From Iphione sp. A-MEVVRFRX5 (Eukaryota): 64,000 bases of DNA. Shown piece by piece: positions 17,919-47,301 of this stretch. The notes under the pieces are model-generated. The model searched no databases and had not been told where the DNA came from. It was given only the letters and a program-made list of their open reading frames with translations. Within the stretch, counting starts at the first letter, position 1; each line of letters starts with the position of its first letter. The stretch is from NCBI GenBank assembly GCA_976226885.1, contig OZ320313.1:46500001-46564000 (forward strand). The letters are read 5' to 3'. A program made the position numbers and the translations under genes.

Positions 17919-17919
<1 letters not shown>

Positions 17920-17970
<51 letters not shown>

Positions 17971-18014
17971 CGTAGTAGTCGTCGTCGTAGAAGTAGAAGT
18001 AGTAGTATAGTAGT
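17920..18014. repeat. (AGT)n microsatellite
   Basis: Long agt run with a few cgt/aga variants. Confidence 0.95.
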
Positions 18015-18423: not shown

Positions 18424-18770
18424 ANNNNNNNNNNNNNNNNNNNNNNNNNNNNNNNNNNNNNNNNNNNNNNNNNNNNNNNNNNNNNNNNNNNNNNNNNNNN
18501 NNNNNNNNNNNNNNNNNNNNNNNNNNNNNNNNNNNNNNNNNNNNNNNNNNNNNNNNNNNNNNNNNNNNNNNNNNNNNNNNNNNNNNNNNNNNNNNNNNNN
18601 NNNNNNNNNNNNNNNNNNNNNNNNNNNNNNNNNNNNNNNNNNNNNNNNNNNNNNNNNNNNNNNNNNNNNNNNNNNNNNNNNNNNNNNNNNNNNNNNNNNN
18701 NNNNNNNNNNNNNNNNNNNNNNNNNNNNNNNNNNNNNNNNNNNNNNNNNNNNNNNNNNNNNNNNNNNNNN
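18424..18770. other. Assembly gap
   Basis: N run. Confidence 0.99.
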
Positions 18771-20592
18771 AATCTACGGCTCCTTACCTAAGTCCATTTA
18801 GTAAAGACATTGGAGCTTATACAGTACACAGATGCGTTGACCAACCTTTACGGGAATCATTTATTTCCCGTTTTTGAAGCAAACATACTCAATATTCCCA
18901 AGGTCACTTTACTGCATCTAACAGGCAGGTGGTCACCTCTTCATGCTGGCCTTTATGAAGGATAGTCCCTTTATGAACACCTGTTATAATAATGTGCCTG
19001 ATAAATTAGGCTCATTTCTCGTATCTCCTTTCCGGATAAACTGACTAGCAAATAAACGGGTATCAATTTACTGGACGGCCTACTATTCTGGGCGCCCTGC
19101 CAAAGGCTGACAGCAATCTGACACTAGCAGGGCTAGTGTACATGTAAGCCTTACTATCCGAAGGACCGGCCATCATAATATATACACCTCCCCGAATCCA
19201 CACGATTTCTTGCAAACAATGCGATCATATCATTCTTATTATTGTTATTAAAAATCTTTGAAACTCATAACCTCAAGCTGACACGAAGGAAGATGTCATT
19301 ATTATCGCTACTCTTATTCCAGAAAAGAAAATCCTACACCACTTACAAATTATGACAACGTAATTCCCAATAAGCCAATACACTACAGAGTGCAGCAGGT
19401 TCACTGTTGCCAGACGTCCATAACGTATACCTTCAGTTCTCTATCACGCTTTAAATCTTAAGTTCTCACTGACAAATTTTGCATACTACCTCAGCTGTAT
19501 TGTGATGATGCGGTTTGAAATGGACAGTGAAAGAAATGTTTCTTCTTCTGATTTCTCAGATTAAAAACAGTGAAAAAAGTTACCTCAAGGCTACACGGTA
19601 AATGTAAGTGTAAGGAACAGATGGCAATCAGCTGTTAAGTACTGTTTTAAAAAAGTGAATATCTGAGATGTAATTTCTTACAGAATATCTTTCACGCCTC
19701 CTTTTCTTGCGGTACTGGACGTAACCATGACTAAGCTCTGCAGGGCCTGAGATTGCTTCAAAGATATGCTCGGTATGGAAACTTCGAGGGAAGGAATTTC
19801 GAAGTAATGAATAAAAATCAATAAACGTTAGAATTTTATACAGCTATCATTAAGGGCACGACATGCTCGAAACAACATGCGACCACCAGCTGTTGACAGC
19901 TGAGCACATTCCGTCGTCGACCTTGAAATGACCTGAGCGTACGTGGCCAGCCCCCCCAGCTGTGACTATCTTGTTTACCCATCCGCCTGGCCACCCATCC
20001 AGACTGTCGCAGAGCTTTCACCTGGTGACGGCTCGCTGGCGCCGGTCGGCCACAATAGGCCGGATGGGCCCAGATTATCTCGCGCCGCCTTGAGCCGGCC
20101 GAAACGCGGAGAATCTGAGGCAGGACTGAGTAAAGTCACCCATCGAATGTAGACCGCAAATTAACAGAAGACATTGGCGAGGAGAGGCAGGCGAAGTGGC
20201 ATGGATGGAATATGCGATTTCAATATCTCGGCATTCAGTCATGAATATTAGAATGTACTGCTGTCATAAGTTCATCTAATTCATCATTTTTCATGCACAT
20301 CGACATTCACTTCTCTGGTGAAATCAACAGTGGGTTTAAACTTAACTTAAGGACTTAAAACTCAACTGTAAAGGAAATTTTCTTATGGACAACTACTGCG
20401 GCGCCACATGGATGTTAGATACACGAGACGGAACAATGCCTCGTAAAACTGCGGGCGGTTTAGCTGAGTAAATCAACTGTCAATAAGCACAAGCGCGATG
20501 GCTTACATGAAATATCTCACGGACTGTTATGATCTTCTCGAGATTACGTAGAGCAACGTAGACCTCAACCTAACCTATGAGACAGAGACACC

Positions 20593-21022
20593 ATGGCCAC
20601 GCGCAACCGGCGCCATCGAGCTCACAGGATGCGGCCCCAAGGGCAGGTCGTGTTCGCAACGCCCCGCAACGACAGAGGCAGTTTGCTCGGGCTGGTCCCC
20701 CTGATGTTGATCCTCAGTTTGGCCGGCCACACGATCGACACCAGCGAAGTGGCCGTCATGCACTACGGCCACTTCGGGGGTCTCAGCCTGACGTGTAAGC
20801 GCGACGAGCTGATTCTCATGGACTCGGAGGTGCTCGGCTACTCGACCAACCGTGGCTGCGCCCCTCAGCCGCTGTGCTCAGTGCCCTACACGCTTGCCAA
20901 GTGGTACTGCCGCGGCAAGAGCACTTGTGGAGGTATGCAGGTGGAGCGGCGTCCTCTACACAAACGCACTTGCGGCTCCGAGTTCACCAACTGCCTGCGA
21001 GTGGAGTATCAGTGCGTGCCTA
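20593..21022 (+). CDS. Gene C, exon 1; signal peptide plus divergent SUEL/Gal-lectin domain
   Basis: Hydrophobic SLLGLVPLMLILSLAG followed by LSLTC..LGYS..GC..LC..YCRGKSTC..TC..NCLRVEYQC; phase-1 donor A|gtgagt. The start ATG could be 20593 or 20629. Confidence 0.85.
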
Positions 21023-21876
21023 GTGAGTAGACTCTGTTATTATTTCTCTATATTATAAGAATATCAAGAGTGGGAGTGACTTTGTATGGCTTAGTCACGA
21101 TATTATGTTCACGAGCTAACCCCTAAGGTTCCTACAATAAATATGTGAATACCTGTACAGGCATATTCACGTCATGTGGCAATGCACGTTTCACTATGAG
21201 AGATCAAAATTTGTAATAACTTGGTGTCGCAATTTTATATGAACCAGGAGCAAACTGTATCGCTTCCTTTAATTAAAAAAAAACAGTAGCAAATGAAAGG
21301 GTTCTGCCAATAACCTTTTAATGTGTCGTTTGAAAACGATGTGAACTTTGGAGCAGATGGAAATCAAATTCTCAACGATCAAAAAATGTTTGTTCAAAAT
21401 GCAAATGGTCCTAAATTACTGTGATTCATAGCAACAGCAGTCTGCTCGGAACTTGAAGTACTCCCTTAGATGTTTCCCATTTGCTCCACATGACCTCTAC
21501 ATAATGCCCATTTTTGAAACTGATACTGAAACTGACACAATATTGATTTCATGAAGGGACAGTAAGCTCTGAAACCACAACGCTATTTTCTGGATTCCAA
21601 AAGTCTAGTCTATCAAATGGAAATACTATCGTCACAAGTATACATGTGCCACCAGGCATGAGTTCAATGACTTAACGATTCAATGTGGAAACACGTGTAC
21701 TTGCACGCCAATTCAACGGGGAATCTTACCTGGCAAATGTAGGTCAGTGCAGTTCTCGAGTGGTTTGAAATTATTGAGTGTCTCGACAACGACATCATAA
21801 AAAAATGAGTTATGCCTTAAAAAACAACAAAACTGCAAAGCATCATTTCAGTTTCAAATCTTCCGGTCGGTTTTAG

Positions 21877-22278
21877 CGTCCAAGTTGACCGACGTGTGCA
21901 CCGATACGGTCTACGAGGCGGCCGCCGGTTACATCAGCTCGCCCTCCTTCCCGGAAATGTACCCACCCGACCGGAACTGCACGTGCGTCCTGAGCGCGCC
22001 CTCTGGTGGCCACGTGCAGATCGACACCGCCTTCTTCCTGCTCAAGTCGACACGGCCATGTCGTGACTGGCTGCGCGTCACCGTCGACGATGCTGACGGT
22101 GACGGTCGGGGCGGCGTACGCGGTGCTAATGGAGCGAGCGGCGGCGGCGGCGGCGGCGACCCGGCGGCGCGTTGCGGCTACGTGCCGGAGCAGCGGCGCT
22201 TTATCGGCCGTCACGTCAACCTTAATTTCGTGTCGGACTCGCACGGTACAGAAATGGGATTCTGGCTGCGGTTCTCTG
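21877..22278 (+). CDS. Gene C, exon 2; CUB domain with Gly-rich insertion
   Basis: Acceptor ggttttag| and donor G|gtaaga; DVC...GYISSPSFPEMYPPDRNCTC...DWL...LNFVSD...GFWLRFS. Confidence 0.9.
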
Positions 22279-22505
22279 GTAAGAGCAACGTAGGTAAAAA
22301 CCGCCGCCTTTAAGACTACGCGCCGCACATTTCCGACAGGGAAAGTGCCTTCCTAAATGGTTTTAGAAAATTGATGTGAATGGATTTTTAACTGCTCATT
22401 CTTCTACGGTGCCATCTAGTCTGTCAAGTTCACCTGCCACTGTATGAAGACGATAATACGAACCACTAAGAATAATCCCTGAGTTTCATTTCATTTTATT
22501 TTCAG

Positions 22506-24941
22506 GAACGAGTGGCGATGCCGTCAAGATTAGATGCGGGAGGTATGTTAACACAGACGACAGCGTGACACCATTTCCAAAAACACTACGTCCGCCGACA
22601 AGTGGTCGATATAGGCGGTCATCTATGAAACCCTTCACGACAACTCCTGCGACAACGACGACTCAAGCGGAAGGAGCTTCACCCGACATTAGTGCGCCAT
22701 CATACGAGCCAATTTCTGGGGAAACGGAATCTACGAACTCGCGATTGAACGGCACGAGACCTGCTAAAGTGGCAGCTACCGTCCGGAAAACTACACGACC
22801 AGATACCCGTCACTACACAGCCAGTAATACAAGGGGGAAGTTATCATCCAGGAAGAGCACCACCGCGTTTTATGGCGGCAACAAGTTCCCTGGCGTTTCA
22901 ACGGCTGCTGAACCACCAAGTCCAACAGCAGTAACTCCTGATGAACGCCTCACCAGCCCAGATCCTCCTCTAACGAGTACATACTGGCCAGCCATTGCCA
23001 TTACACAGCGGACGGGACTGTCGCTTGATGATGAACTACTGACTACCGATGCAAACAGGGTTCTTGTGAAGGACAAGAGTACAGATACGACAGAAGACGA
23101 TGATATTCCAAATGTTTATCCCCCAAATGATGAAACCGAGATGTCTGCGCCTGTAGAGACTCGGAATGGTGATCCATTGGCTGGTCAAGAGAGCAGCAGT
23201 GAAGTTGGCAAACAGAGCGGGCAGAACCTTAATGAAGACAAAGAAGTCGGCTTCCCTTCAAGCAGTAGGGCAAGCGTAATAGGGACAGGCTATGAAGAAA
23301 TCAGTAATGACCTTCGACACAACGCTGTAGTAGAACTGAATTACGAGCAAGATGAACAGGAAAAGAAGGAAGAAGAGAACAATATGATAGAAGTAAACTT
23401 CATTGATTATGAATCGTATACCGAGGCTGTTCCGCCCTTTGAGGAATATACCAAAAGAGTACCTTCTACAATTTTCAACACAGACGAGAAGATGAGATTG
23501 CTGAAGAACAGTGATTTTGACCGGATTTCGGAGGGAAAGAGCTTTTGGACCAGCTCGGAATACGTGGATCTTGACGCCGACTACGACAAGGAGTACCTGG
23601 TGGGTGAGGACGCCCTGACGCCCATTGTCATGACAACCCCACCAGCTGCAATACCCACGCGAACATCGAGTCAGGCACCACTTCCGGAAATGCCGATGGC
23701 GGCGGCGACGACGGCGACAACCGTTTCGATGACGAAGACGACGGCGAGGGCGAAGACAACGGCGACGACGACGACGGACGAGCCTTTAATTCATTTTGTG
23801 CATGCGGAGGTAACTACCAATGAACCTTCGAGAGAGGTTGGTGGCGCGACAGTAACGAACAGACCACTCAAACCGCTCGACTTAATGGACTCTGGCATTG
23901 AGGAGGCTCTGCCCGAGCCAGCGGAAGGAACAACGCTACTAGATATATTATCGCCATCACTAGACGACATGGCCACAGAAACTGACGTTGCAGTTAAAGG
24001 TCAATGGGAAGGACGGGCAGGGCCACTGAGTGAACGACACGAGGAGAGTCATGTTCTACCAGGCGACCGAGTAGCACCGACACAGTCAGGGGAACACGTC
24101 ACCCGACAAGGCAAGAGGAATGACTTTAAAGACACACCGATGGATAACGATATATCCGAGAAGCACACTACAGACCATCGTTTATTTTCGCCATCAGAGG
24201 GGTCTAATAGCAGGCTGGGACCTCTGGATAATAGGATCCCTGCCGCTCCGATCGGTGAGGAAGCTTGGGTCGAAGAGCGCGACTTTTCGTTAGAAACAGA
24301 TATGGAAAGAGATTACCAGTTGCATCCAACAGGTATTCATGACTGGCGACTCACACTGTCCAGAGCCGGCTTTTCCTACTCCGAAATAACGACAGACAGA
24401 ATGAAAGCCAGCAGCACACCCGACGAACTGCTGCACTACGTTTACTCGGGCCGGCCGGCCGGCACACGCCCGTCCATTGCCACCGGAGAGTTCCAGCCAG
24501 GTGGCGACATTATCTCATTGATAGACGAGCAGGATCTGACAACAACGCCAATGACAACCGCTAAGTCGACGACAACCACTACTACGCAGCCCCCGGAGAT
24601 TGTGACACTGTTCGGCCGCTTGGCTCCTGACCGGCCAATCAACACTCTGGGCCAGAAACCGGCCGTGCTGCTTCCTGCCAGGCGCCTGACCCGACCTCAC
24701 CCTGTCAGCACCCGTCGGCCACCCACCGACATGCGCACTATGATCGTCGCTCCCCCGGACATGGTATGGGAATATGGGGAAACACCCTGGAGGAATCTTG
24801 GCCTCAATACAAGCTGGATCCCACCTCCTCCAGAAACAACAAATGAGCTTGCCCCTTGGGACGAGCAACCACAAGACAAGGTATCCTTAACGAATCCTGC
24901 CGCTGTCAAAGCAAAAACCGCAAATAAGGATTTGATGTGGG
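22506..24941 (+). CDS. Gene C, exon 3; 812-codon Thr/Pro/acidic mucin-like stalk
   Basis: Acceptor ttttattttcag|, in frame with the 800-aa ORF; phase-1 donor TGG G|gtgcgt at 24941/24942 matches the TM exon. Confidence 0.8.
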
Positions 24942-25389
24942 GTGCGTATACATTGAATTCTACCTAGGTTGAAGTCCCACACTACTCATTAGCAAACCTG
25001 TGGGAGGGCACCAGTGTAAAAACACGCAGAAGCAACCTAGCTATGCACTAGACAATGCTTGTCTATCCCCCAGTTCGGTCTCAGTAGGCAACATTTACAT
25101 AGAGGGTTAAATGTGATTTATTCTCAGAAATCATGATCTCTCTCAAAGTTGGATCCCCTCTGTGATACGGTCTTCAACTGGGTCCTTACTCTAGACCCAT
25201 TCAATTTCCGTTTCATAAACATCAACGTTAGCTGACTAGTAAATTTACAGCCCGAATTCTTTGTGTCTTTTATACAGGCATGTCTTTTAACAGTCACTGA
25301 TTTGTGACAAGTATAAAGACATGCAAAGAACAATACTTACACGTCTCATCACACAATGATGGTATGCTAACATTATCTTCTTTTTACAG

Positions 25390-25462
25390 TTCTCATAGTA
25401 ATTGCGATAGTACTCTGGGTTGTCTTCGTTGCTTTGCTCGCGCTACTCATTTATCACAGAAG
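25390..25462 (+). CDS. Gene C, exon 4; transmembrane helix
   Basis: Acceptor tctttttacag| and donor AG|gtaagc; encodes VLIVIAIVLWVVFVALLALLIYHRR; phase 1 in, phase 2 out. Confidence 0.85.
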
Positions 25463-25651
25463 GTAAGCGTTATAAGATCACCCTTTCCAATTTCCCCCCT
25501 TTCAAAGGTCATTAAGATGATGTAATTTTGAGGAAAGGAGTCCTTTGAACTAATCCCCTAATTCACTTCGTTACAATATAGATTGCATTCATCAGAAAGA
25601 AGCCATCTCATGTTCCTTCGAGTTACAATAATTTTTATCATTTCTTTTCAG

Positions 25652-26859
25652 GCGGCGGCTTGCATGTTTCCGTGGGCAGACTACAACGCACCGGGAAATG
25701 CAGGATGTTCCTATTTCAAAAGACAAGTGGTCTCCATCGCTGTCTGCACCTTTGACACCCGGCATCCGCCCTCACCACTCGTCACCTGAGCACAGCCACA
25801 TGGCTACCCAGACGGGCCGGAGTCGTCTTCGCTCGGGCCCGCGCAATGAGAGTAGCGCAGGCAGGATGAGAACGAACTCTGTGCTCAGCTGGGGCAGTGT
25901 GGCCAGCCTTCAGCGGGAGCTTGCTGAGCGTAGCCTCTCCGACTGGTCGTTGCCCAGCGCCCATTTAAACGTGTCAGTAGGCCGGGCGTTGTCACCATCT
26001 CCCTGCGAACGGGCTGACTCCACCCAGACGCTGGTTTCAAGCGGCGGACACCAGCTCATGAGCAGCTCGGCACAGACGGACGTGAGCGGCACATTGAGCA
26101 AACGCTTCCGTCGGTCGGCGATCAAGACTCGGCCTTCGTCTGGCGTAGCTTCTCCCGACCAGGTGTCCCTAGGCAGCGTCTCCTTTGATCCTGTAGTCTA
26201 CACCGACTCACGAATGGGTACCTGTGAACGTGGTGCGAGCAGCTCCGACCGACAGGTGGCAGGATCATCGCTACCCAGGGCTGAGGTGGTTGATGAGCAG
26301 CATAGGAGAGACGGAGACCCGAAGAGAAGCCTGCGTCACGTGCCCCCGGCGCGCCACGTCCACACCATCCTACGAAACACACCGGGCTCTACGCGGCAAC
26401 CCGACGCGCGCCCCCAGGTGGGCCTCTCTAACTCGAACGAGCGGCGCGCTAGCGTGTCATCGGTGGGTCGCGTGTCACTTCCGCCTCCGGGAAGCGGCGT
26501 CCAAATGCGACCGAAGCAGCGTCTCGCTAGCCGCTCTGGGCGACGGTGCAGTGACATTTCCCTGCCACCGCCTCCGCTCCCGCCCGACTGCTTCACCGTG
26601 CCTCTACCCACAGCCCCTGCGTCCGGCGCCGCCGAAACCCAGGACAAGTCCTACACGACGATCCGCCCGCGCCATCGCCCGCGCGCCGGCTCCATCAGCG
26701 CCCAGTTACAGAGCGAGGTGGACAACTGGCGCTCAAGTCTGGCCAGTCTCTACACAGCGAACGACGTCAGCAGCAGCGCCGAAACAGGCTCCGAGCCAGC
26801 AGGAGATCAACTGCCCGACAGTACAGTGGTCTGCCATGACGACGTCGCTAACAGCCAAG
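25652..26859 (+). CDS. Gene C, exon 5; Ser/Arg/Pro-rich cytoplasmic region
   Basis: Acceptor tttcttttcag|, phase 2, in frame with ORF 25698-26891; phase-1 donor G|gtacgt. Confidence 0.8.
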
Positions 26860-27038
26860 GTACGTCCGTACCTTTACCGATATATTTCTAGCTAACCGTC
26901 CGCGTGGCTATTAATCAGTTGGTATCCAGGAGGTTATAATACATGTTATGAGGACCCCACCCCGATGTTATGATGTATTAAAATAATGCAACCCACAGCA
27001 TCTTTAAAAAGTGCCTTTTCCTTTACACTTTCATTAAG

Positions 27039-27550
27039 GTCGGGAGATGGTCGACGATTCAACGGCTCCTCCCGAATTGCTAAGACAGCCTCCTTTGCTT
27101 AGCTTCCCACCACCACCACCCCCGTCCCCTCTAAACCCACCGCATCCGCCGACCCCGCCCACTCCACCACCTCTACCAGAGCGCCGCCTTTCCGTCCAGA
27201 GTGATAGACAGCAGGCAAGGAAAAGCAACAAGAGCGAAGACCCGGACGACCTGCAGGAGACACCTCCAGGGAGGGAGGATTTAGCTGGAGACGGCCAACT
27301 GACCTTGACTCTGGCCCGAGTTAAGTCGTCCCCAAATGTGAGTGGTCCGCATCAGCTGGAGGAAGGAGCTGACAATGGGGAATTACGGCGCGGCGAGTCC
27401 GCCCCCGACATGAACAAAGACAGCTGCCCCGAGGAAAAGCTCAAGGGGTTGGTGCCACAGCAGGCATTCTTCTTTAACGATAAGGTGCAGCCCGAGCTGC
27501 GGCGCATCCTCTCCAAACGGCGGTTCAGTCACCTGGCTGTTGAGGTGTAG
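27039..27550 (+). CDS. Gene C, terminal exon; poly-Pro segment, ends HLAVEV
   Basis: Acceptor ctttcattaag|, phase 1, in frame with ORF 27047-27550. Spliced CDS is 5061 nt = 1686 aa plus stop. Confidence 0.8.
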
Positions 27551-28676
27551 AGATCAAATCACCCACAACTAGCACGAGGGCGTGTCAAATATCGTGAGCT
27601 GTCGGGTAATTACCCGCCATTATCTCGTTAATATCGTACTTACTGCTGAATGATGGTCTCCATAATTATATAACAAATAATATCATATCATATCCGTCTC
27701 AAAAAGGCACGAAGATCCAACGCAAATGCTAGTTAGGCCCTAAATTCAACGACAATCAATACCAGGTACTATTATTATTATCCATACGCTAACATAACGG
27801 TAATATACTTATGTATTATATAAGCGAACTATGAAACACGTGATATTTATGCTTCGGTAATAGGAATCAAGCGCACTTTCCCAGAAAAAAAACACAAGTA
27901 GAACGTCATTTGTCAACCATGCACTTGGGTACTCCCCTCTTCAATGAGTATATAGAATATAACGTTATTATGGTTGCTTTAAGGTCTTTAAATAGAGGGT
28001 GCTCCAAGTTTTTATAAACAAAGTAGAAAGCTTTTCATTTAGGCAATGGTGCTGCATATAAGTTGATATGTTCACAAATTGTATGTATATTTTTAACAGG
28101 CACATAGAGGTAGACATTAGGTGTATATTTGATGGAAAAGCACTATATATTATAGAAACATATTCTTAAATCCCTCTCGCAGCCCTGACCTATCAAGCTA
28201 GTTATGGGCCCAGTATTATGCAGCAGCTATATGGTATGTCTGTGACATCCATTACTTAAATATGAATGGATAGTATATTCGGAAATAACTACAAGTATGG
28301 TAAAAATACAACTATTTATCGCCGCTGTTACAAATGTTTACAGACATGGAATGTGTTTATACGCGCCTTAATCTGCTATCTATTTCTTGGAAGTTTCTCA
28401 CCATACAGCTACATATATGTACTGTGTATCTCAAACAGCCCCAAAAGCTGACTTTCATATCGTCGGAAATGATCGTAAATGGAGATGTAAAATTTGGGTC
28501 CAGGCTGCCGATATAAATACACTTCGTTGTCGTTCTGTCCTCTATCTTCCTCCCGATTTCCCCCTTTAAAAATTCATAGTGACATCCATGTGTATGTTCA
28601 TCATTATCAGTCTTCCTCGGACACACAAACACAAAGCACACTCAAACCTATCACCCTCCACACCAAGCCCGGCCAC

Positions 28677-28726
28677 GTACGGCAAGAGGCCGTTATTCGG
28701 TACGGCAAGAGGCCGTTATTCGGTAC
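28677..28726. repeat. 23-bp tandem duplication
   Basis: gtacggcaagaggccgttattcg twice, plus gtac. Confidence 0.9.
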
Positions 28727-28874
28727 ATCCATCAGCTCCATAATGCTGCTAATGCAGTGGCAATCAGGACGCCCCGCCTGCTGCTTCCCCCTCCCCATCT
28801 GCTCGGCGGCTAGTGGCCACTACGACTAATGGAGCCGCCGCCGCTAGGTGGCAGAGCGCGCAGTCCGCACTGAC

Positions 28875-29000
28875 CTGGGGTTCATGACGAGCCGACGGAA
28901 GAAGTACGTCCACGTGATGTAATCCATGGCATCCTGCTTGGAGGAGATGGTGCCCGCCACGATCTCGGCGTTGAGGTGCTCCGGTAGCACCTCCAGTAGG
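28875..29000 (-). CDS. ASCC3: ASCC3 internal exon (winged-helix region preceding the second Sec63 domain)
   Basis: [41 protein letters not shown]; acceptor tacccgcag| and donor AG|gtcagt; phase 2-2. Confidence 0.92.
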
Positions 29001-29338
29001 CTGCGGGTATAAGACAAGGCGGGCGATAGCACAAAGGCAGACTGTAACAAATAACGGGCGGCGTAATTGGCTACTCTGATGGAATCCTGCGCCGCACACG
29101 GCGGCATAACAGCGCAGATGCTGTACATTGACTGCTTCTGTTCATTCGACTTCTCTCAGCCAGAGAGAGAGAGGGATTTTTTTTTTGCATATTAACAAAG
29201 TTATTCAAATGGCACAAATGAATCCTTACGAAACAATTTGTTAGGTTTTTTGCGAGACTATTTGACTAAAATTGATACAGATGATGTAAACGGCCTCCCC
29301 GGTTCCCTGTAGTATTTGACGCTTATCAAGGGACTCAC

Positions 29339-29471
29339 TTCGATTCAACAGGGAACGGCTCATAGAGGAATTTCTTGTAGAAGTGTTTTTTAATGTCGTG
29401 AACGAGAATGACAGCTTTTCCTTGATCATCGAACTGAGGCCGGCCAGCTCGACCCATCATCTGCAACACGT
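29339..29471 (-). CDS. ASCC3: ASCC3 internal exon (helicase motif VI)
   Basis: [44 protein letters not shown]; acceptor ttctgcag| and donor AA|gtgagt; phase 1-2. Confidence 0.92.
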
Positions 29472-29879
29472 CTGCAGAAAATATTTCAGTACAGTGTAGT
29501 TAAAAAAACAAACAAACTTCTAAAAAGACACTGCGATGCAGACAGCCTCTCAATATATATTGAAGACAAACGTTTGGGAGTAAAGTTATATAAGATCTTG
29601 ACAAAATTATCGTGACCGTCTGTTGTAATTTCATTACGTACGCAGAAATTACTGTTCGAAATATACGGCAATACCAGGTGTATGGGGTGGAGAAAATATG
29701 TTATGGGTACGTATATCTAGTGATCTCAACCTTTTGGTAGCAGTAGCTAATTCGACCAATTTAGTTGGCAAAGGATGACCTAGGTGAATATACTTGACAT
29801 TTATGCAGGGACGGTTTTTCTCCAAAAGCTGAGGAGGAAATGAGAGCAGACAAGATGACATAAACTGGTAGGACGTTAC

Positions 29880-30000
29880 CTGTAATTGGGAAGTCCACGT
29901 AGCGCCTGGTCTTTCCATCGTAGTACTCAGTTCCTTTGACGACCACTAGGTGGGCGGGGAAGTTGACACCCCAGGCCAACGTGCTTGTTGCTACTAACAC
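29880..30000 (-). CDS. ASCC3: ASCC3 internal exon (helicase motif V region)
   Basis: [40 protein letters not shown]; AG/GT boundaries; phase 0-1. Confidence 0.92.
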
Positions 30001-30767
30001 CTATACGTTTGTATGAACCGTCAACAATAAAAACAAATTGTGAAAATGGAATTTCGTTTAAAGAGGGCATTTATACGTAACACATTTTTAACGATCAAAC
30101 GGATACAAATAACTGAAGAGACACTCTTAAATTCATGTTGTGTTTAGATCTAAACAATGATAGTCAACCGTGTATTAATCAGAGAACTAATGCACAGGTA
30201 CGGTTTATAATAACATATTGTACTGGAAAAGGGAAACGTAAGAAGAGAGAATGGATTCCTGATCTGAACAAAATAAGATGTATCTGTTCACAGTAACCAT
30301 CAATTCTACACTTCAACAAATACAGAAAGTGGTCACGTGATCACCAACAGCCAATCAAATCAGTCTTTTCATTTCAAGGTTGACTCTGTTGGAATGCAGA
30401 CAACACATCTGATTTAGCATGCAGATCTCATTAAAAATACAGTATGTCGGTATTTACCAATTTTCATCGTCAAAACACACTTTAAGAATACATGTACTTC
30501 TACACACCTGGGGTGGATTAACACATCAAAATTTGGTCTTAAAGTGATCGTCATCCAACAATTCTTCTGATCATAATAACAATTTAAAAAGTTTTGTTTG
30601 CCTGAAATGAAGCCACGGGTGGGGTTTGATCCCTTCACTACATCAATGATTTTGGAAAGGGTTCATGGATTTTAACAAAGAAAAAATTTCATGCATCGTT
30701 TTCTCTGAATGACAATCACTTCCAAATAAATGGCAAGTATTCGACCCTACTGGCTCAACCACCTAAC

Positions 30768-30905
30768 CTGGATCTTGGAATTTACGAAGAGCTCCTCTAC
30801 TGTTTTGCGATCGCGTTCCTGAAGACCGGCGTGGTGCAGACCGATACCGAAGGCCAGAGTGAGCTTCAGATTGCTGTCTCGGATATCCGAGATGAGCAGC
30901 TCCAT
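30768..30905 (-). CDS. ASCC3: ASCC3 (Ski2-like helicase) internal exon, second helicase cassette
   Basis: MELLISDIRDSNLKLTLAFGIGLHHAGLQERDRKTVEELFVNSKIQ; acceptor cttgcag| and donor CAG|gttagg; phase 0-0. Confidence 0.9.
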
Positions 30906-31003
30906 CTGCAAGCAAAGCCCAGATAGATATCTACATTAATGTGTCACTGTGATGAACTAGAAGGCAACTGCTTACCGACAACATCGACGTGACATAAGCT
31001 AGC

Positions 31004-31306
31004 NNNNNNNNNNNNNNNNNNNNNNNNNNNNNNNNNNNNNNNNNNNNNNNNNNNNNNNNNNNNNNNNNNNNNNNNNNNNNNNNNNNNNNNNNNNNNNNNN
31101 NNNNNNNNNNNNNNNNNNNNNNNNNNNNNNNNNNNNNNNNNNNNNNNNNNNNNNNNNNNNNNNNNNNNNNNNNNNNNNNNNNNNNNNNNNNNNNNNNNNN
31201 NNNNNNNNNNNNNNNNNNNNNNNNNNNNNNNNNNNNNNNNNNNNNNNNNNNNNNNNNNNNNNNNNNNNNNNNNNNNNNNNNNNNNNNNNNNNNNNNNNNN
31301 NNNNNN
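31004..31306. other. Assembly gap
   Basis: N run. Confidence 0.99.
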
Positions 31307-34300
31307 CAGACCTAAACAAATGGAGAAAGCCTAGTCTATCAAGGTATCTAATTAACCTCAGGATAAGAAAGGAACATGGTGACTGTGTACACTGCAAATA
31401 AATGCTTAATAGAGAGAGCTCAGCAGTTTGGCGTTTCACATAGCCAATGTCTACGCTGTCCTTTAATGTTAACCAAGCCCGCATCTGAGCCTCCCTCCTG
31501 CGTAGGGCCCATCACTGCCAAATGGGCAAATAATGCTGGCTCAGTATGATATAGATTGTGAAATCGAGATCACGTGGCTGATTTTTGTGTTATATTTTGT
31601 GTATTTTTTTAAAGATAATTCAATAATTTGTAAATGCAGCACTGTCCCAATGCACTTCGCATCGATTTGTTTATATGCCTACGTATTCGGGAAAATTACG
31701 TTGCTACAGCATCTGTATCCACTTAGTGGATGAAGTAATGTTATATCCAGCCCTGACCGCACTATGCAATGAAATGAAACTAGCCTCGTCATAAAACCTA
31801 AACTTACGCATAAAATGACAAGAGCAATCTCTAGTCCCCCGCCTATACACACAATACCATGGCATTTTGACGACATTTTTGCAATCCTTGAAGATATCGA
31901 TGGTATATTTACTCTGTAAGGGGGTATTCACATGTACACGTAGGATTTCTGGGCGGAAAATACGTCTACGGGTACGGAGACGTAAAAGATCCCCTGTGGA
32001 ACGTATGTTACTTGTTAGAGGACAGAGGCTGAGACTTAACAAAAGTCAGAGATACAGATTCAATCTGAGGGAAACATTTTACATCAAGATGCCTTATTCG
32101 CTCATCATCCATTTAAAATCACAAGAAAATGGATTTGGTCCCATATACAGAGTACGTCTTTACCTATCTCATCTCATTCTCTACACGAGACTCCGTCAAA
32201 ACGACAACGAATCGCTTCGCGGACGTGGCAATTAATCAAATGTCCCATAAGCTAGCGATATAATCTATCATAATCGCTCTTCTCTGTATTGTGAACCGTA
32301 CTGTGGTATGTGCGCGGATGCATCTGTGCCTGCATGTAGGCATGCCCCCTTCCCTACTCCCTCACGCAAACCCATCTCCCCCCTTCCAGACAGCCACACA
32401 TGACCAGTTCTTATCCGGCCAAGATCAAAGCCTGATTGGCGGCTGCTACGTTCACATCCTCGGCGTGCTCTGGGATCAGACATTGGCGGGCCGTGCAGGT
32501 GCGTGGTGGAGGGCGCGAGTGGATTTGCTGTGGTGGTCCCATCTGTGCTGGAAGGCTGCGCTGATGGCGGGGGTGCACGGCTCCCAGTGCGGTCGATGCG
32601 CCACTGTGGCGGCCCGACGTGAGCACCTCATTGAGAGTCTCGGCAGACGAGGCGGGTGTGCCGCTCATTAGGCCCGTGGGTAGGTAACGGTGTGTACTGA
32701 TTGGCACTCAGATCCATTCAAACCCAGCACCGTTTGTAGCCCATCACCCCCAGGGACAGTGCGAGAGGAACTGTGAGCAAAGAGATGCAAGATAACGACG
32801 GACATAGATCACTCGAACAGTAGGCTTTGAATACAGCGGACCCGCATGTGGAGAAAATGCTCTTTTTTAAGAAAACAGAAAAAGAAAGAGATAAAAGTCG
32901 AACAATACCGAGAGGATGCGAAGGACGGCCGAGCAGAAACTCGACATCAGAAACAAAGACAGCGCTGTGCATGACAATGAAACTGACGAGAAATATTTTA
33001 TTGACATGAGGGAATAGTGTTTGAGTAACTAGAGAACCCGGAATGTTAACTCTTACTCCGAAAATAAAAATGATACAGAAACTTCTGCCCATGCACTTAT
33101 GTAGGCGTGACCACCGCTTGGTGACTGTCTGAACTCATTGTTCGGATAGCTTGAAATTCAAGTCCTAACACAAAGTAACAATTTCATTCAGGCCCCACCG
33201 AAGGCAGCATTTACAAAAACAACGGTCGTCTTCTAACCAGCTATTCCACACGGCAGCATTCTCGCAGGCTAAAAGCTTTTGGATGTGGTGTTGAGCTACT
33301 CCTTATCTGAAACCATGAGAAAGGCGCTCCTCTTATCGCTCACTATCATCTATTCATCTGCCTATCGTGCTCTGTCTATTTACCGGTCTGAACGCTCTAT
33401 CTGCTTGTCCTCACGAGTCCGATCCTTTGTCGAACACTCTCTGAAGTCGAGAGGCGTGTCAGTTTTCAGGTTTCGCTCCGTGTCTCTATCTGTGACATTA
33501 GGTGAAGTATTGAGCGGGTCTTCATCTATATGCATTTTCCGGAAAGATTTAGTCAATGGAAACTATCTGGACATCCATCCAAACCTTTCCTATCATATTA
33601 CAGTGATGCATTATTCACTGAATATGAGCACCTATCTAGACACCAGGTTCTTTCCATCTTAAAACGCATACGAATGATACTTCGCGAATAAAATAGCCCA
33701 GACGGTGATAACTGCGCATCTCTGGACCAAGCAGGTATATAAAACATTCTTATCCACTTCCAAAGAAATTTGCGGGGATAGTGCTAGGGGCAGTTGGCTG
33801 GGAATGTAGCAGGCTCGCGAAGGTGATGGTTTCCCTTTTAAATGTTTATGACAGAGAAGTAAACTGCATTGTCAAATATAAGAGACCGACAAGCATATCT
33901 CCTTCGTCAAATCATAATGAAAGCCCTTCCCTTCAGAAAGCGGGAATCAGGCGAGACTGCTAACGCTACTATGTATTAAAAGTGCCACATTACAAGATAC
34001 AGTAATTTGTATCCGGCTGTGGAAGCCAGTTACTTGCTCTAGGCTAGTGGGTAACTGTTGGTTACTCTCATTCCAATTAAGTGCGTCATTAAGTAACTTT
34101 CGATTAGTTAACGTATATAATTGAAATGGACGTGATTAAAGCCGACGGCGCCCTTATATGCTGAAGTAAATCGCTCTCTCTAGGAGCCGCCATATGTTCC
34201 ATTTGTGGACACCCTTTAATATTCAAAGACAATTTATGTCATGTTGCGTGTCCCAAGGTGAACGCTATGCATTATGCATGATTCACCTTTTTCTGTCTCA

Positions 34301-37300
34301 GACCACAGCATTGGCTTGGGGGAGTATAATCAAAACTCTTGTCGAGACAAAAGAATATTGAATCAATAACTTTCATGCAAATCTAGTTAGGGCGTTTCAG
34401 TCCTTCCCACCCTCACCCCCACCCCCACCAATCCTTCATAAGAAGCCATTTTCAACTGCGTTGCCTTTTACTATCAACATAAGGTTATCCGCCATGCATT
34501 TTGATGGACCAATCTCAAGTTTCGTTAAACTAAAATTTCCAGCGAGTAGATGTGGAAGTAGATATCCTTCGAAAGTTAAGAACGTGGATCGAGCCATACA
34601 TGAGAAGCGATCCATAATTTGGGTTCTATCCAACAATCTTAAAACCAAAGTGCCATTAAATTACTGCTAGATGGACGTCTAATTAAAGAAGGCATTGAAA
34701 ACACTGCACACAATCCTCAATGTTACATAGCAGTTTGAATAGATTTGACATCTTCCTTAACAAGAAAGCTAAATTACACGATAATAACATCAACTTTTTG
34801 GTAAGTCGACATCGAACAATTCCGACTTTACACACACGGACTTTTACTGCTATCCACCAGAAAGGTTCCATTGTTGAGATCGTATTATCAATAAAAGAGT
34901 CGTCAGAGCCGAGTAATGCAGTCCTCTGATTGCTCTCTAGGAGTCGATGCTGACAACTAATTAGAACTTTAGATCCAGTAGACAGAAGTCTCACTTACGA
35001 AATCCCCAACTATGCAAAGAGAAAGCGCTGCTGTTGTGTAGAAATAGATAAATACAAAACCTAACGTATTGATATGATAGACTTAAAATAAAATAGCTAG
35101 ACAGATGTAAAAAAAATCAATACCTTATCAAAGCTTTCATACACGTCAGGAGAAAAAGAAAGACTAACAGTTCATTTCCACTTTTGCATATCTACATGAA
35201 ATTCACATATATATTAATAGCTGTTTTGTCGATGCTCGAGATATGCCGATCGATGCTTAAGATATGACCCCAAAAAAGGCTACCAAACACCGGTTTATCT
35301 ACCCCAAAGAAGGCGACACCTTTAGATTCATAAATAAATACTGTAAACTACTGGCTTAAATATAACATAGCGCTCAGGGTAAATATGTTTTCGACAAATG
35401 GGTATTATGATGGCTTTCAAGTTGTATTTAATATAGTTCTTTTGTATTTTTGTTAACACATCTTCCTTTTTATACTGTTGTGACTATAACTTTAATATTT
35501 TCTTTTAAAAGAAAAACGTCATGTGCACGCTAACTGGACGTTTCTTGCTTGTTCTCTAGGTTTGTAAATACGTGTACATACAGTGCAATAAAGCACAACT
35601 CATCTTTAGTGTCTGAGTGCATTTATGCACAACTCATCCATGCTAATGAGGGGTGCTCCTATGCATTACCAGGCTTTCAATGGTTAATTTAGTGAAACGA
35701 ACTTGCACCTAAATGTAACCGCCAGGATATACACAGAGACTAAATGCAACGAATCAAATCGATTCTTCCCCACACTGAATTCTTCCGAAATCAAATTAGT
35801 CTAACTGTTGCTCGAGCATTCAACCACACGCTGATGAACACAGAAGAGCCTGCGCCAAGGTGACAACTGACATCGACTAAGCCACGTGTTCGTAATAACT
35901 GTCCAAACTTCGCCAATTTTAAATGCTAGCAGTTGGGCGGTTGAAGGACAACACCGTCTGGACACATGCATGGTATAATTCCAATAAAACCCAACTCGTT
36001 ATCAGATGACTTCACGACCATATCCGTCCATAAATTCTCACTCTAGCCAGGATTCCAGCGCAAGCTGTCATTCCGCCAAAAACACGTCGAAAAATTCCAT
36101 TCTTGAGGTCTGAGATGCAATCTAGGACGAGGTATCATTTGCTGGTAATGGCACTGTCTGGGGACTTCGATGTCGATGAGAGGTCGCGAGACATCAGACG
36201 GCTGCATTGGAAACAGCTGAGTAACTAGAGAGCGGCTGAGCGCCCCCCCCCTCGGATGAGTAGCTGTACGTCATACGATGAGAAGCATCAGCCTGTGGGA
36301 TTTAAGCGAACGGCGCTCTGCCTTTCCCGATGCGGCTGCCGTGACTCTCATAGACGAGGTGGAGGACATGCTACATAAATGAAGAACGACACAGACTGAT
36401 CGCGACAAATTTTCGAAAATGACCTTGTATTGCCTAAAAATAATGCTGTAGTCCGAAGCTATCTTATTTTCACGCGTCATACTAATACGACCCACGTCCT
36501 GCTGATGTATGTGGTATAGAGAAGCCAACAGCTTAATGATTTCAGCAGGCTGGTAAAGAAAATATTCATAAAGGCGCCTTAAAACTTCATCATTTCAAAA
36601 TAAGCACAAAACTATAGGCCACATCGAATGAAGCGCCGGTAGGTGATAACTACTGCGTGTGTTGTCCTACCCTTAGTTCCACTTCACTCTTATTCTCTGT
36701 GGTTTTAGTTGGAGGCCTTGGTTATATAATACACCGGCAAGTATACACTGCACTTTTTATGGTTGCCAGGTAGATATCGTGGTGATCATAACTACAGGCA
36801 AATCGAAGTACATATATTCCGCACCCAAGTACATGTAGTTAAGGTGCCGTTCAGCTCAGAACAATATTAGGCTGTGTACTTTTCTCAGATTAGCTATACC
36901 CTGGAAGTTTTATGTGACCTGATCATCCCCATGTGTTCCTTGGTATCAAATAGTATATTAATGTAAGTTGGGCCTACATATTGGCGCTGCCTTCAGTTCA
37001 CCATAAATATGGAATATCACGGAGATAAGGAACGATAGCGCTGTTTGTGTATATACTGGCAGATAATAACTCTTAGTAAATATAATTTTGACTGATGCAG
37101 CAGGAATCTTCGTAAAAAGTATCGCTGAATGATTTTTAAATGGCTCAACATTGTTATATCTAACTCGACCTGGACTCGAGATTGAATTAGGCAAATTGAC
37201 AACGACGAAGTCACTGCCGTCCCGAAACACATCTAATTTATGTCACCTACAAGTACTTCTGTCCAGAAGCTCTCTACAATACATACAGTGTTGACGATGG

Positions 37301-38399
37301 CTATTATCTTTATGACAGGAATTCACCATTATCTGAGATGTTTGATATGTACGCCAGTGTCGGGCATTATCTTCAAGAGCATCGGTCGACACGAATATAT
37401 TGGTGACATTATCTCTGCTCCTATCATAACGCCCGAACTTAGGTAAATAAAGCACAAACTCCTGTCATTGTGAGCCACATTGCTCAGCACAGGATACAAC
37501 TGAGGGGGAAATCCATGGCAGAATGGGTCAAATATCTGAGATATCGTTGTATCGTTTCCAGAAGTAATTTAACCCAAACACTTCCAGCGTAGCCTACGGT
37601 TTGGAGGTTCTAGACTTCACCTAGATAAAACTACGTCATATTTACTCAGAAAGACATACCCTAGCATGAATTAGTAGTTTTTTGGTTTTGTTGCATGTAT
37701 GTTTGTGGGCGTGTTAGCAAAGGAATAAGTTGACATAATTTCTCCTTTAAAATACTTGTATTACTAAAATTCCCTGGTGCCATGGGTCCATATACATGTA
37801 TACGTATTATATATCTAAATCAGTTCATTTGACCAAAGAATTTGAGAGTTATAAGAACCACAAGAGTGTGACAGAGGGTCAGACAGCCAGCAGCATTCCT
37901 AAGGTCCTGCCCTCTGTATGAGGCGGGGGACAAAAAAGGATTTCAGAACACCAATGGTCCTGATATCTCATTTTAGAAGCTTAAACCTTGCAAAGAAAAT
38001 ATTTTCCTGCTCACTCACTAGATCCAAATAAATCCGCAATATAAAGTAATGCAGACGCCAGAGAACTCTCCAAGAACCTCAGACTCCTGCAAGCGTGGCA
38101 GATCCGACCACACCAGACCTAAGGGCACAAGCCTTTCCAGCACACTACACACAAGGCCAAGAGCTCTTTCCAGCCGCAATCTTAGCGCCAAACAGTCCCC
38201 GTGGCGACTGCGATTGGACAGCTCCCTTCAACGTTATTAACCAAGCTGATTGTCCCCCAAAATCCTTCCTGTAGGCTTTGTCTAAGGCAGAGAAGATTCG
38301 GCTAACATACCAAATGTCAAGTCAGCCAAACCTTCATGTATTACATGTATTAATAGCACGCAACCCGTCTTAGCAAACTTCCTCAGGGTGTTGAGTGCC

Positions 38400-38950
38400 A
38401 CTACTATGATGGCAATGACAAGTAGTCCTGTCTCAGTAGAGGAACTCGCTATTTTGTCCACTGGTCTTACCTTTATCACACACCTGCTAATGTGAGGAAG
38501 GCCTCTGTCCGACACAATCGGGACTACTTCCCCTGCAAGCTAACCTTAAAATGGTTTGTTGGTGAACGGAATCCAGATGACCCGCTCGGCGCCACCTCCA
38601 ATCTCCATCTCAATCCACAACAGCTTCAAGTCAAACGAATGGCCAAACAGCGGCAAGACTCGTAGATGCCCTCGGGCGGAAGCCATCCTTCCGTGGGTGG
38701 AAACTTCTGCGACGAACCTACCCCTTTACAATGCTTGACTGTGAACAGCACCAAGAAAGACCCTCCGAACAAACCTATTAGGGATCCTATATGATAAGCA
38801 GATTCTTCGATGCCTGGCAGCGAAGAGGACATTGTCATGAAGCGGATAGACAAAGCTGGTTCTGACGTTACCATGGATACTGCCTGCCACCAACAGGGTC
38901 TCAAGGCAGCTTACCAAGAAAACGTAGTACCGAAAGCAACCAAACAACCT
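38400..38950 (+). mobile_element. Decayed Penelope-like retroelement remnant (N-terminal/pre-RT region)
   Basis: Frameshifted pieces SSPVSVEELAILSTGLTFI (38421-38477; cf. Penelope LS..E..LLSKGLxF) and EDIVMKRIDKAGSDVTMD (38825-38878; cf. DIVIKPADKGxxVVxMD), in the expected order. Confidence 0.6.
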
Positions 38951-40505
38951 AACCTACACCTCCAGTCGGGAAAGTAACCTTTTGTTGGCATAAAAAACGC
39001 CAGTAGAGACAGATAACGTTGACACGTTGTAACTAATGCGAAGGCATTTGACATCTGCTGCTACTCTTAGAATCGGAGCCAGGAAAGTACTTCTTTACAT
39101 CAGTCAATTAATAGGGGTTATCGGTTTGCAACTATGCACAGAACAGTCTATACTGCACCAAATGTAAATAAATGAAGAATCACTGAGCAATGACAATGCA
39201 TAATGGACACGATCTTGATTACCCATTAAGCGGTACCGGATTTAGTGAAGTTGGTTTCCGTTTTTCAAATAAGATTTATCTTATCTACAATTCTAACACC
39301 GTCTGTAAAGGCGCGGCTATCCCATGATACAATGCTTTAAGTTAGATATAGAATGTGTTCAGAGTTGTGCGTGAAATATTGCTTGGTAGAGATTAAAGAG
39401 GCGCAACAGTGTTTCAAGTACTGCCCCTAACATACACTGTATACATAACATGTCATACCGTATATTTTTATCTTCAAAATTTGTATTAACTTGTGGGAAC
39501 ACTGACTAATGTAAATATACCCTAACAGAGGTGATAAATAACTAAACCTACCATGGGTGTGATGGAACCACCCATAAGGACCAGATAAGGGCTTATAGAT
39601 ACTTCATAAGCCTTTGGGGTGAATCACACCCCATGAGATATGGATGTCAAATTAGGTGTTCATCAACATCCAGACGTGGATGCTACATTTAACCAAATTT
39701 CAATTGTTGACAGTTGATATGGTTACATATCCACATGTGATGACACATGTCTCCAAGACAACCTCTGTGTCATATGGAAGGTTTCAATGAAAACCTTCAG
39801 TTAGATCACGGTCGCATCACTGAGTGGAAGCTTCGCAGCGTTTAACATATATCTAATCATATATTATATGTATATATATGCTCTCTGGTACCACAATTAA
39901 TCTAGCTTCCATAACCACGACCACGACAGGAATGGAAACGGTGGCTGTGCTTGAAAGGACGCGTTGAGAGACTGAGACGTCTGCTAGCAACCCTACTCCA
40001 AACGGCAGCCCCCAGCTGGGTTCGACGTCAAGATTAACCTCAGGTCACTACTGCTGTTCTTTTCAATGAAGCAGCTTAGCGGGTGGCTCCCAAAAGTCCC
40101 CAAAGAATAAGCAAGGAAACCCATTCAGATTTTCTGAAGAATGGGGTGAAATTTGGCTACGGATGCATACTGCCCTGTGTTGGGCTGAGAAATAAGCTGA
40201 ATGACAAGGACAGTAGGGATCACGAAACGCTGTCCGGTTACTCTAGCTAAAAGGGTGCTAGCCATACCTTCTGGTTCATACGTCAACCAAGAAGGACAAG
40301 CCCATAGGCAAGGTCAGTGTTTAGCGTGCATGTGGCACAAGTTTGAATGACCTTTCCGAATGTAAGTGCTCTTTAGTCAAGTGTTTCCATTTAAAGTAAC
40401 TCATTATGTGAAGCCTCAATAGAAAGCTATTGGCTACGTTTTCAAGGCCCGGGTGTGCACGAAGTACTTGCATACACCTGTGCGGTGTTCAAACCAGACC
40501 TGAGG

Positions 40506-40510
<5 letters not shown>

Positions 40511-40583
<73 letters not shown>
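40511..40583. repeat. Compound (TC)n(TA)n microsatellite
   Basis: Directly visible. Confidence 0.95.
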
Positions 40584-40585
<2 letters not shown>

Positions 40586-41129
40586 CAGTACATTAGATAC
40601 ACTAAAAAACAGTGGTTCTACTAGAAGGAAACTGTAGCTGCACAACTGCATGGCGATGGTCTTGCGTTCACTGACCAAGTACCTAATATCTTCTGGCCTG
40701 AGTATGTCATAGTCAAACTCTTTATCATTTGTATCATAAACGATTCATTTGAGAACTGGAGTTTAAAGGCCTCAGATAAGGATGAATAAAGTCCTAAAAC
40801 AATTCAAAACAAGAGAAAACAGAGCAAAACTATAAACTGAGGGTGATGGCGTGCGCCAAAATCACACACACCCTCCCGAACCCCACCGATACAAAGACAG
40901 GTTCTACAACCACCTTCTTACCAACGAGTTAGAGATCTTATCGAATGGGCAGGCGGGTGAGAGCTGGGACAAGGTGCTTTAAACCGTACATAAGGGAAAA
41001 GGACGCAACAGTATTTAAGAAAACCTCACGGAGAAGGCAGCACGTGCCTGACACGCTCTGGACATGCCATTGCCTGTTCAGGAAGCCTGCCTCTCCTCGG
41101 CCACCTAAGGACTGCTAACCTTAGCCGAA

Positions 41130-47254: not shown

Positions 47255-47270
47255 GTGTACGCGCGCGCGC

Positions 47271-47301
<31 letters not shown>

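What the first reader, a model, noticed from the sequence alone, without database searches (positions are those of the whole stretch)
28875..30905. Four pristine ASCC3 exons with no visible neighbours: receptors nested antisense in a giant intron, or an orphan fragment
Seen: 4 exons, intact frame and splice sites, about 173 codons. Known: ASCC3 continues after MNPS with a second Sec63 domain (several hundred aa) and has well over 1000 aa upstream. I found no Sec63-like exon on the - strand in 1-28874, and there is no gap between this exon and gene C. I also found no [17 protein letters not shown]-type upstream exon in 31307-64000. Inference: (a) gene C, and perhaps all three receptors, lie antisense within a >28 kb ASCC3 intron; (b) a recent partial duplication or transposon-captured fragment; or (c) misassembly at the 31004 gap. 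Short exons could have escaped a by-eye scan.
Basis: partly seen in the sequence, partly recalled or inferred. Interest (0 to 1): 0.7.

Follow-up and report, generated by a model that had tools for sequence, protein, structure and literature searches.

The report
ASCC3 exon island between giant introns
The four exons are a genuine, single-copy piece of an intact ASCC3 helicase gene whose neighbouring exons lie 83 kb upstream and 379 kb downstream, so the lectin-CUB receptor genes sit backwards inside one enormous ASCC3 intron; this is a striking but known kind of gene nesting.

Summary
Four minus-strand exons (30905-30768, 30000-29880, 29471-29339, 29000-28875; 518 nt) have canonical splice sites and an open frame. 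They encode part of the second helicase cassette of ASCC3, matching positions 1200-1372 of the solved human chain 8alz_B.

The neighbouring exons exist, outside the window:
- The "[17 protein letters not shown]" exon is at C1:46613696-46613838, which would be window coordinate 113,696. It ends at chain position 1199.
- The "(S)YYNL..." exon is at C1:46149286-46149397 and starts at chain position 1373.

Both lie on the same strand, in the right order and with matching codon phases, and both occur once in the 1.18 Gb genome. The flanking introns are therefore 82,790 and 379,477 bp, against 0.3-0.8 kb for the introns inside the island. The ASCC3 stop codon is at C1:46142071, so the gene spans at least 481 kb.

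At least 14 SUEL-lectin/CUB loci, all on the plus strand, fall inside the 379 kb intron. The 83 kb intron holds a single-exon GT92 glycosyltransferase ORF on the same strand as ASCC3.

An orphan fragment is effectively excluded. Earlier follow-ups on this same genome (s1-325156, s1-351993) reached the nesting conclusion from the receptor side.

The parts
30768..30905 (-). ASCC3 exon A, 46 codons (MELLISDIRDSNLKL...SKIQ), at the start of the second RecA-like domain of the C-terminal helicase cassette. Phase 0 at both ends.
   Evidence: maps it to 8alz_B positions 1200-1245 (E 1e-23). It occurs once in the genome.
29880..30000 (-). ASCC3 exon B, 40 codons plus 1 nt ([17 protein letters not shown]...DFPIT), carrying helicase motif V.
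   Evidence: maps it to 8alz_B positions 1247-1285 (E 6e-33).
29339..29471 (-). ASCC3 exon C, 2 nt plus 43 codons plus 2 nt ([15 protein letters not shown]...PVES), carrying helicase motif VI.
   Evidence: maps it to 8alz_B positions 1287-1329, with 42 of 43 residues identical. It occurs once in the genome.
28875..29000 (-). ASCC3 exon D, 1 nt plus 41 codons plus 2 nt ([13 protein letters not shown]...RRLVMNP), the first half of the winged-helix domain. Its donor opens the 379,477 bp intron.
   Evidence: One search matches PF23445 profile positions 5-44 (E 6e-16). maps it to 8alz_B positions 1331-1371.
1..28874 (-). The first 28.9 kb, in the direction of transcription, of the 379,477 bp ASCC3 intron. 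It runs on to C1:46149398, outside the window. This part holds the three plus-strand SUEL-lectin/CUB/mucin receptor genes; the last one, gene C, has its stop codon at 27550.
   Evidence: The next exon, E, is at C1:46149286-46149397. No ASCC3-like exon was found in this stretch. The plus-strand ORFs are listed.
30906..64000 (-). The last 33 kb, in the direction of transcription, of the 82,790 bp ASCC3 intron. That intron starts at C1:46613695, which would be window coordinate 113,695.
   Evidence: The upstream exon U is at C1:46613696-46613838. No ASCC3-like exon was found in 30906-64000, and no Rfam family matches there.
31004..31306 (.). A run of 303 N lying 98 nt upstream of exon A, inside the 82.8 kb intron. 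No coding residues are missing across it.
   Evidence: Coding continuity (chain position 1199 followed by 1200) comes.

Best explanation
The four exons are constitutive internal exons of one intact, single-copy ASCC3 gene on the minus strand of chromosome-scale contig C1. ASCC3 is the dual-cassette Ski2-like helicase of the ASC-1/RQT complex.

The exons encode the second RecA-like domain (motifs V and VI) and the first half of the winged-helix domain of the C-terminal cassette. They look orphaned only because they form a 2 kb island between two very large introns, one of 82,790 bp upstream and one of 379,477 bp downstream. The 64 kb window covers only parts of both introns.

The downstream intron contains a tandem array of at least 14 SUEL-lectin/CUB receptor loci, all transcribed antisense to ASCC3. 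The three receptors in the window are the end of that array nearest the island. The upstream intron contains a single-exon GT92 glycosyltransferase ORF in the sense orientation.

Shown here: the exon order, strand, codon phase, residue-level continuity and single-copy status.

Inferred: Pol II transcribes across the whole array, which at the usual 2-4 kb/min would take about 2-3 h. The exon D donor at 28875 is then spliced to the acceptor at C1:46149397. Tandem duplication of a nested guest gene is what inflated the intron.
For: Position of the gene:
- The window is C1:46500001-46564000.
- On the minus strand of the same contig, the first Sec63 domain is at 46616611-46618860 and the second at 46142155-46148843.
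- The DEAD-domain starts of the two cassettes are at 46623173-46623298 and 46616045-46616173.
- The winged-helix family PF23445 is split between exon D (profile positions 3-45) and C1:46149289-46149399 (positions 45-81).

Downstream neighbour, exon E:
- It reads tttgcag|C TAC TAC AAC...TCG GAG|gtac.
- With the AG left over from exon D this gives S-YYNLDDTDHD..., which maps to 8alz_B positions 1373-1409.

Upstream neighbour, exon U:
- It encodes ...[40 protein letters not shown] and ends GAG|gtaagt.
- It maps to 8alz_B positions 1150-1199, directly before exon A at position 1200.

Copy number and gene ends:
- The DNA of the finding, exons A and C, and exons U and E each occur once in the genome. 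The only other hits are the weaker paralogous cassettes.
- The terminal exon ends ...LADLELDD* with its stop at C1:46142071.
- A tblastn seeded with SNRNP200 open-frame pieces places the remaining cassette exons in two compact clusters, 46613693-46623322 and 46142131-46148870, with only exons A-D in between.

Guest genes:
- SUEL hits and CUB hits between 46160985 and 46496909 are all on the plus strand.
- No such hit falls in the 82.8 kb intron.
Against:
It was examined only through genome-wide family searches, which score only the best candidates.
- An N run lies 98 nt upstream of exon A.
- The N-terminal exons of ASCC3 (roughly the first 400 residues) were not mapped.
Confidence: 0.9

Rival explanations
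1. Assembly or scaffolding artefact. The gene is intact, but one or both giant introns are inflated, or the receptor array is wrongly placed inside ASCC3 by a misjoin, for example at the N run at 31004-31306.
For: An N run of 303 nt lies 98 nt upstream of exon A, and two more lie in the window. No read-level check was possible.
Against: - Exons A-D and receptor gene C lie on one stretch with no N (18771-31003), so the antisense adjacency does not depend on any join.
- Exon E and the 10.6 kb of intron next to it (to 46160000) also contain no N.
- Both flanks have the correct strand and order. The coding sequence resumes at exactly the next residue on each side.
- The N runs have irregular lengths of about 300 nt, and none occurs in the adjacent 90 kb that was fetched.
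- The operators state that N runs may be deliberate masking.
Confidence: 0.06
2. Orphan fragment. A recent partial duplication or a transposon-captured piece of ASCC3 sits among the receptors, while the functional gene is elsewhere.
Against: - The DNA is single copy, and the exon peptides hit only themselves plus distant paralogous cassettes.
- The rest of the ASCC3 locus lacks exactly chain positions 1200-1372 and abuts them on both sides, with matching phases.
- The frame is intact and identity to human ASCC3 is very high, for example 42 of 43 residues in exon C.
Confidence: 0.01
3. The locus is transcribed as separate units rather than one pre-mRNA of about 480 kb. The pieces would be joined by trans-splicing, or the island would be used only in a minor isoform.
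For: - The intron is extremely long and holds many antisense promoters, which should collide with the host polymerase.
- Exon A happens to begin with ATG.
Against: - Exon boundaries fall in the middle of domains and no piece ends in a stop codon.
- Reading through the exon D donor meets a stop after 11 codons, by my own reading of the sequence.
- The ATG is also a methionine in human ASCC3.
- A helicase lacking motifs V and VI of the C-terminal cassette would be non-functional.
Confidence: 0.03

Closest known systems
ASCC3 (human; yeast Slh1), the dual-cassette Ski2-like helicase of the ASC-1 / RQT complex (PDB 8alz; PMC10076317; PMC9938168)
   Same: The exons align residue for residue with the C-terminal cassette of human ASCC3 and score above SNRNP200/Brr2 and Slh1. 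The locus has the full layout of two DEAD starts, two winged-helix domains and two Sec63 domains on one strand.
   Different: Nothing differs at the protein level in the parts examined. The gene structure here has two introns that are 100 to 1000 times longer than their neighbours.
Opposite-strand nested genes in large conserved introns, for example LRRTM1-3 inside the alpha-catenin genes CTNNA2/1/3 (PMC3933685)
   Same: Genes for single-pass cell-surface proteins lie antisense within one large intron of a housekeeping-type host gene.
   Different: In that case there is one guest per host intron. Here a tandem array of at least 14 guest loci fills a single intron, and a second intron holds an unrelated sense-strand guest (GT92).
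SNRNP200/Brr2, the paralogue in the same genome (C15:67.51-67.54 Mb)
   Same: It has the same dual-cassette architecture. Its open-frame pieces detect the ASCC3 exons at 37-60% identity.
   Different: It is compact: its Sec63, WH and DEAD family hits span about 32 kb (67510234-67542270), with open frames of up to 534 aa. It is a clearly worse match to the four exons than ASCC3.

Membership tests
ASCC3 (Ski2-like dual-cassette helicase) | The best match is to ASCC3 rather than to Brr2/SNRNP200 or other Ski2-like helicases. | tested here: met
   For exons U, A, B, C, D and E the top solved-structure hit is 8alz_B (ASCC3) at 40-111 bits. SNRNP200 scores 19-71 bits.
ASCC3 (Ski2-like dual-cassette helicase) | Helicase motifs V and VI of the second RecA-like domain are intact in the C-terminal cassette. 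| tested here: met
   [13 protein letters not shown] and [12 protein letters not shown] are identical to the human chain in the printed alignments. The motif names come from my own knowledge of SF2 helicases.
ASCC3 (Ski2-like dual-cassette helicase) | Two tandem cassettes, each with a DEAD/RecA domain, a winged helix and a Sec63 domain, lie on one strand in order. | tested here: met
   Pfam PF00270, PF23445 and PF02889 each hit twice on C1 minus strand between 46142155 and 46623298, in the expected order.
ASCC3 (Ski2-like dual-cassette helicase) | The N-terminal ASCC2-binding region is present. | not tested
   No referenceable full-length orthologue was available, so the exons upstream of C1:46623322 were not mapped.
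Nested (intronic) gene arrangement | Host exons that are consecutive in the coding sequence flank the guest genes on one strand. | tested here: met
   Exon D ends at chain position 1372 and exon E starts at 1373 with complementary phases. Both are single copy and lie 379,477 bp apart.
Nested (intronic) gene arrangement | The guest genes lie wholly within the intron and on the opposite strand. | tested here: met
   All SUEL and CUB hits on C1 between 46149398 and 46528874 are on the plus strand, from 46160985 to 46496909, plus the three genes in the window. The count is a lower bound because only the best candidates are scored.
Nested (intronic) gene arrangement | Host and guests are both transcribed, and the host is spliced across the guests. 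| not testable with these tools
Duplicated or captured gene fragment (pseudogene) | A parent copy carrying the same exons exists elsewhere in the genome. | tested here: not met
   There is one DNA match in the genome. The peptides match only themselves and distant paralogous cassettes.

The most novel reading that the evidence does not exclude
One ASCC3 intron has served as a sheltered site for a lineage-specific tandem expansion of antisense lectin-CUB receptor genes, starting from a single ancestral nested guest. An earlier agent reports such a guest in molluscs; that was not tested here. Transcription of the ribosome-rescue helicase through the roughly 380 kb array would then be coupled to receptor expression by transcriptional interference, so that activating the array throttles ASCC3 or the reverse.
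Probability: 0.1. Interest if true: 0.6.

Novelty: new member of a known kind. Interest (0 to 1): 0.3.

Why it matters
The result settles an apparent anomaly: the exons are not a stray fragment or an assembly error, and the ASCC3 gene is intact.

The gene architecture is extreme for an invertebrate. One intron of 379 kb holds at least 14 antisense genes, next to an 83 kb intron holding a sense-strand glycosyltransferase ORF, while the other introns examined in the gene are under 1 kb.

That makes the locus a useful natural case for three questions:
- How a very long intron is transcribed and spliced.
- How convergent transcription between host and guests is tolerated.
- How tandem duplication of a nested gene inflates its host intron.

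It also matters for annotation. Gene predictors with a maximum intron length will split this ASCC3 into two or three fragments.

Tried and rejected
- **Sequencing runs:** No reads were laid and there is no RNA or depth evidence. The message said to go on with other tools and did not call the stretch human-like, so I kept using the exons by reference in the structure and own-genome searches.
- **DEAD family search:** PF00270 over the genome was swamped by other helicases and gave only the first exon of each cassette. I mapped the rest with tblastn seeded with stop-to-stop open-frame pieces of the SNRNP200 paralogue, plus a motif scan.
- **Pfam on single exons:** exons A, B and C gave no significant hit. 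B had only a chance MgtT match at E 0.09. Only exon D hit a family, PF23445.
- **Other open frames in the 82.8 kb intron:** the four tested besides GT92 had no Pfam match. No Rfam family matched in 27000-64000.
- **Literature:** a search for ASCC3 together with "nested" found nothing on nested genes in ASCC3 among the listed papers.
  - The big protein search was not used because the protein's identity was not in doubt, so no full-length orthologue was available for a one-shot exon map or a cross-species synteny check.
  - The N runs were not filled or looked up.

Full report
**Observation.** On the minus strand of the window there are four exons: A 30905-30768, B 30000-29880, C 29471-29339 and D 29000-28875. 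Each follows a pyrimidine tract and an AG, and each is followed by a GT. Their in-frame translations contain no stops.

**Identity.** Each exon was searched separately, by reference, against the chains of solved structures. The best hit is always human ASCC3, chain 8alz_B:
- A: positions 1200-1245
- B: positions 1246/7-1285
- C: positions 1287-1329, 42 of 43 residues identical
- D: positions 1331-1371

The three codons split across introns account for positions 1286, 1330 and 1372. SNRNP200/Brr2 and yeast Slh1 always score lower. Exon D also matches the winged-helix family PF23445, at profile positions 5-44.

The exons therefore encode the second RecA-like domain (motifs V and VI) and the first half of the winged helix of the C-terminal cassette. 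PMC10076317 describes the tandem-cassette architecture of ASCC3.

**Where the rest of the gene is.** The window is C1:46500001-46564000 of a 1.18 Gb assembly in 89 contigs. Genome-wide family searches place the following on the same contig and the same minus strand:
- The first Sec63 domain at 46616611-46618860 and the second at 46142155-46148843.
- The DEAD starts of the two cassettes at 46623173-46623298 and 46616045-46616173.
- PF23445 split between exon D (profile positions 3-45) and C1:46149289-46149399 (positions 45-81).

*Downstream neighbour.* Reading that last place shows an exon E at C1:46149286-46149397: tttgcag|C TAC TAC AAC ... TCG GAG|gtac. The AG left at the end of exon D plus this C makes a serine codon. 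The peptide YYNLDDTDHDVVNKYL... then maps to 8alz_B positions 1373-1409.

*Upstream neighbour.* I ran tblastn with stop-to-stop open-frame pieces of the SNRNP200 paralogue (C15:67.51-67.54 Mb) against the contiguous sequence 46500001-46654000. It found compact exon clusters at 46613693-46623322 and, downstream, at 46142131-46148870. Only exons A-D lie in between. It is at C1:46613696-46613838 and ends GAG|gtaagt. It maps to 8alz_B positions 1150-1199, directly before exon A's position 1200.

*Intron sizes and gene span.* Phases fit at both junctions, 0/0 upstream and 2/1 downstream. The introns are 82,790 bp (U to A) and 379,477 bp (D to E). The introns inside the island are 0.3-0.8 kb. The last exon ends ...LADLELDD* with its stop at C1:46142071, so the helicase-coding part of the gene spans at least 481 kb.

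**Copy number.** Each of the following has exactly one strong match in the genome; the remaining hits are the first cassette of ASCC3, the two cassettes of SNRNP200 and a third Sec63-type helicase locus at C1:101.4 Mb:
- The 2,031 bp of the finding.
- The peptides of exons A and C.
- The peptides of exons U and E.

No second ASCC3 exists. The other refutation criterion, adjacent exons between 27551 and 28874 or just beyond the gap, is not fulfilled either.

**What fills the introns.**
- SUEL-lectin hits and CUB hits on C1 between 46160985 and 46496909 are all on the plus strand. They often occur as a SUEL exon followed about 0.5-1.6 kb later by a CUB exon.
- Counting distinct loci gives 11 outside the window plus the three genes in the window. 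That makes at least 14, a lower bound because only the best candidates are scored. None lies in the 82.8 kb intron or beyond exon E.
- This agrees with the earlier follow-up notes on this genome, s1-325156 and s1-351993, which report 16-17 genes. I confirmed the nesting from the host-gene side.
- Their claim about limpets and abalone was not tested.
- The 82.8 kb intron contains a 541-codon open frame on the minus strand at C1:46586320-46587942, with a strong Glyco_transf_92 match (E 8e-38).

**Misassembly.** The window has three N runs of 346, 303 and 295 nt. The 90 kb fetched upstream and the 30 kb around the 3' end have none. Four points argue against a misjoin:
- The run at 31004-31306 is intronic, and no residue is missing across that intron.
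- Exons A-D and receptor gene C lie on one stretch without N.
- Exon E and its adjacent 10.6 kb of intron are also free of N.
- Order, strand and phase are right on both sides.

**Mechanism.**
- *Shown:* one gene, with exons in order on one strand and guests antisense within one intron.
- *Inferred from general knowledge:* the host pre-mRNA must be transcribed across about 480 kb, which takes hours at 2-4 kb/min. The 28875 donor must pair with an acceptor 379 kb away. Convergent transcription with the array could cause interference. Gene C stops at 27550, and no AATAAA or ATTAAA occurs on the plus strand before 30026, so its 3' end may overlap exons B-D antisense. The most economical origin is tandem duplication of a nested guest gene, which inflated the intron.

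**Comparison and novelty.** Opposite-strand nested genes in large conserved introns are well known, for example LRRTM genes in alpha-catenin genes (PMC3933685). An array of 14 or more guests in one intron of ASCC3 was not found in the literature searched. I rate it a new member of a known kind. It is of moderate interest as genome architecture and as a caution for annotation, and it is not a new mechanism.

Noticed in passing
L025:2320-3942 (-) = C1:46586320-46587942, inside the 82.8 kb ASCC3 intron (window-equivalent 86320-87942): A single-exon 541-codon open frame has its first Met at codon 22 and a hydrophobic N-terminus. It matches Glyco_transf_92 strongly (PF01697, E 8e-38). It is a second, unrelated guest gene, in the same orientation as ASCC3.
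   Followed up: partly
window 27551-30026 (+): After the stop codon of receptor gene C (27550) there is no AATAAA or ATTAAA on the plus strand until 30026. That position lies inside the ASCC3 intron between exons A and B. Gene C's 3' UTR may therefore run antisense across ASCC3 exons D to B, or it may use a variant signal.
   Followed up: partly
window 28677-28726: A perfect 23 nt unit (GTACGGCAAGAGGCCGTTATTCG) is present in 2.2 tandem copies, in the 1.3 kb between gene C and exon D.
   Followed up: no
window 18425-18770, 31004-31306, 45450-45744: There are three N runs of irregular length (346, 303 and 295 nt) in the window. The adjacent 90 kb and the 30 kb at the gene's 3' end have none. They look more like masking than fixed-size scaffold gaps. 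They were left untouched.
   Followed up: no
C1:101415303-101488449 (-): A third locus has Sec63, winged-helix (PF23445) and DEAD hits on one strand. It is probably another Ski2-like helicase with a single cassette, and it also spreads over more than 70 kb.
   Followed up: no
L024:3678-4108 and L024/L025 around window-equivalent 83288-84152: Long GA/CT and GT/CA dinucleotide microsatellites lie inside the 82.8 kb intron. They show up as artificial open frames of (RE)n, (LS)n and (CV)n.
   Followed up: no
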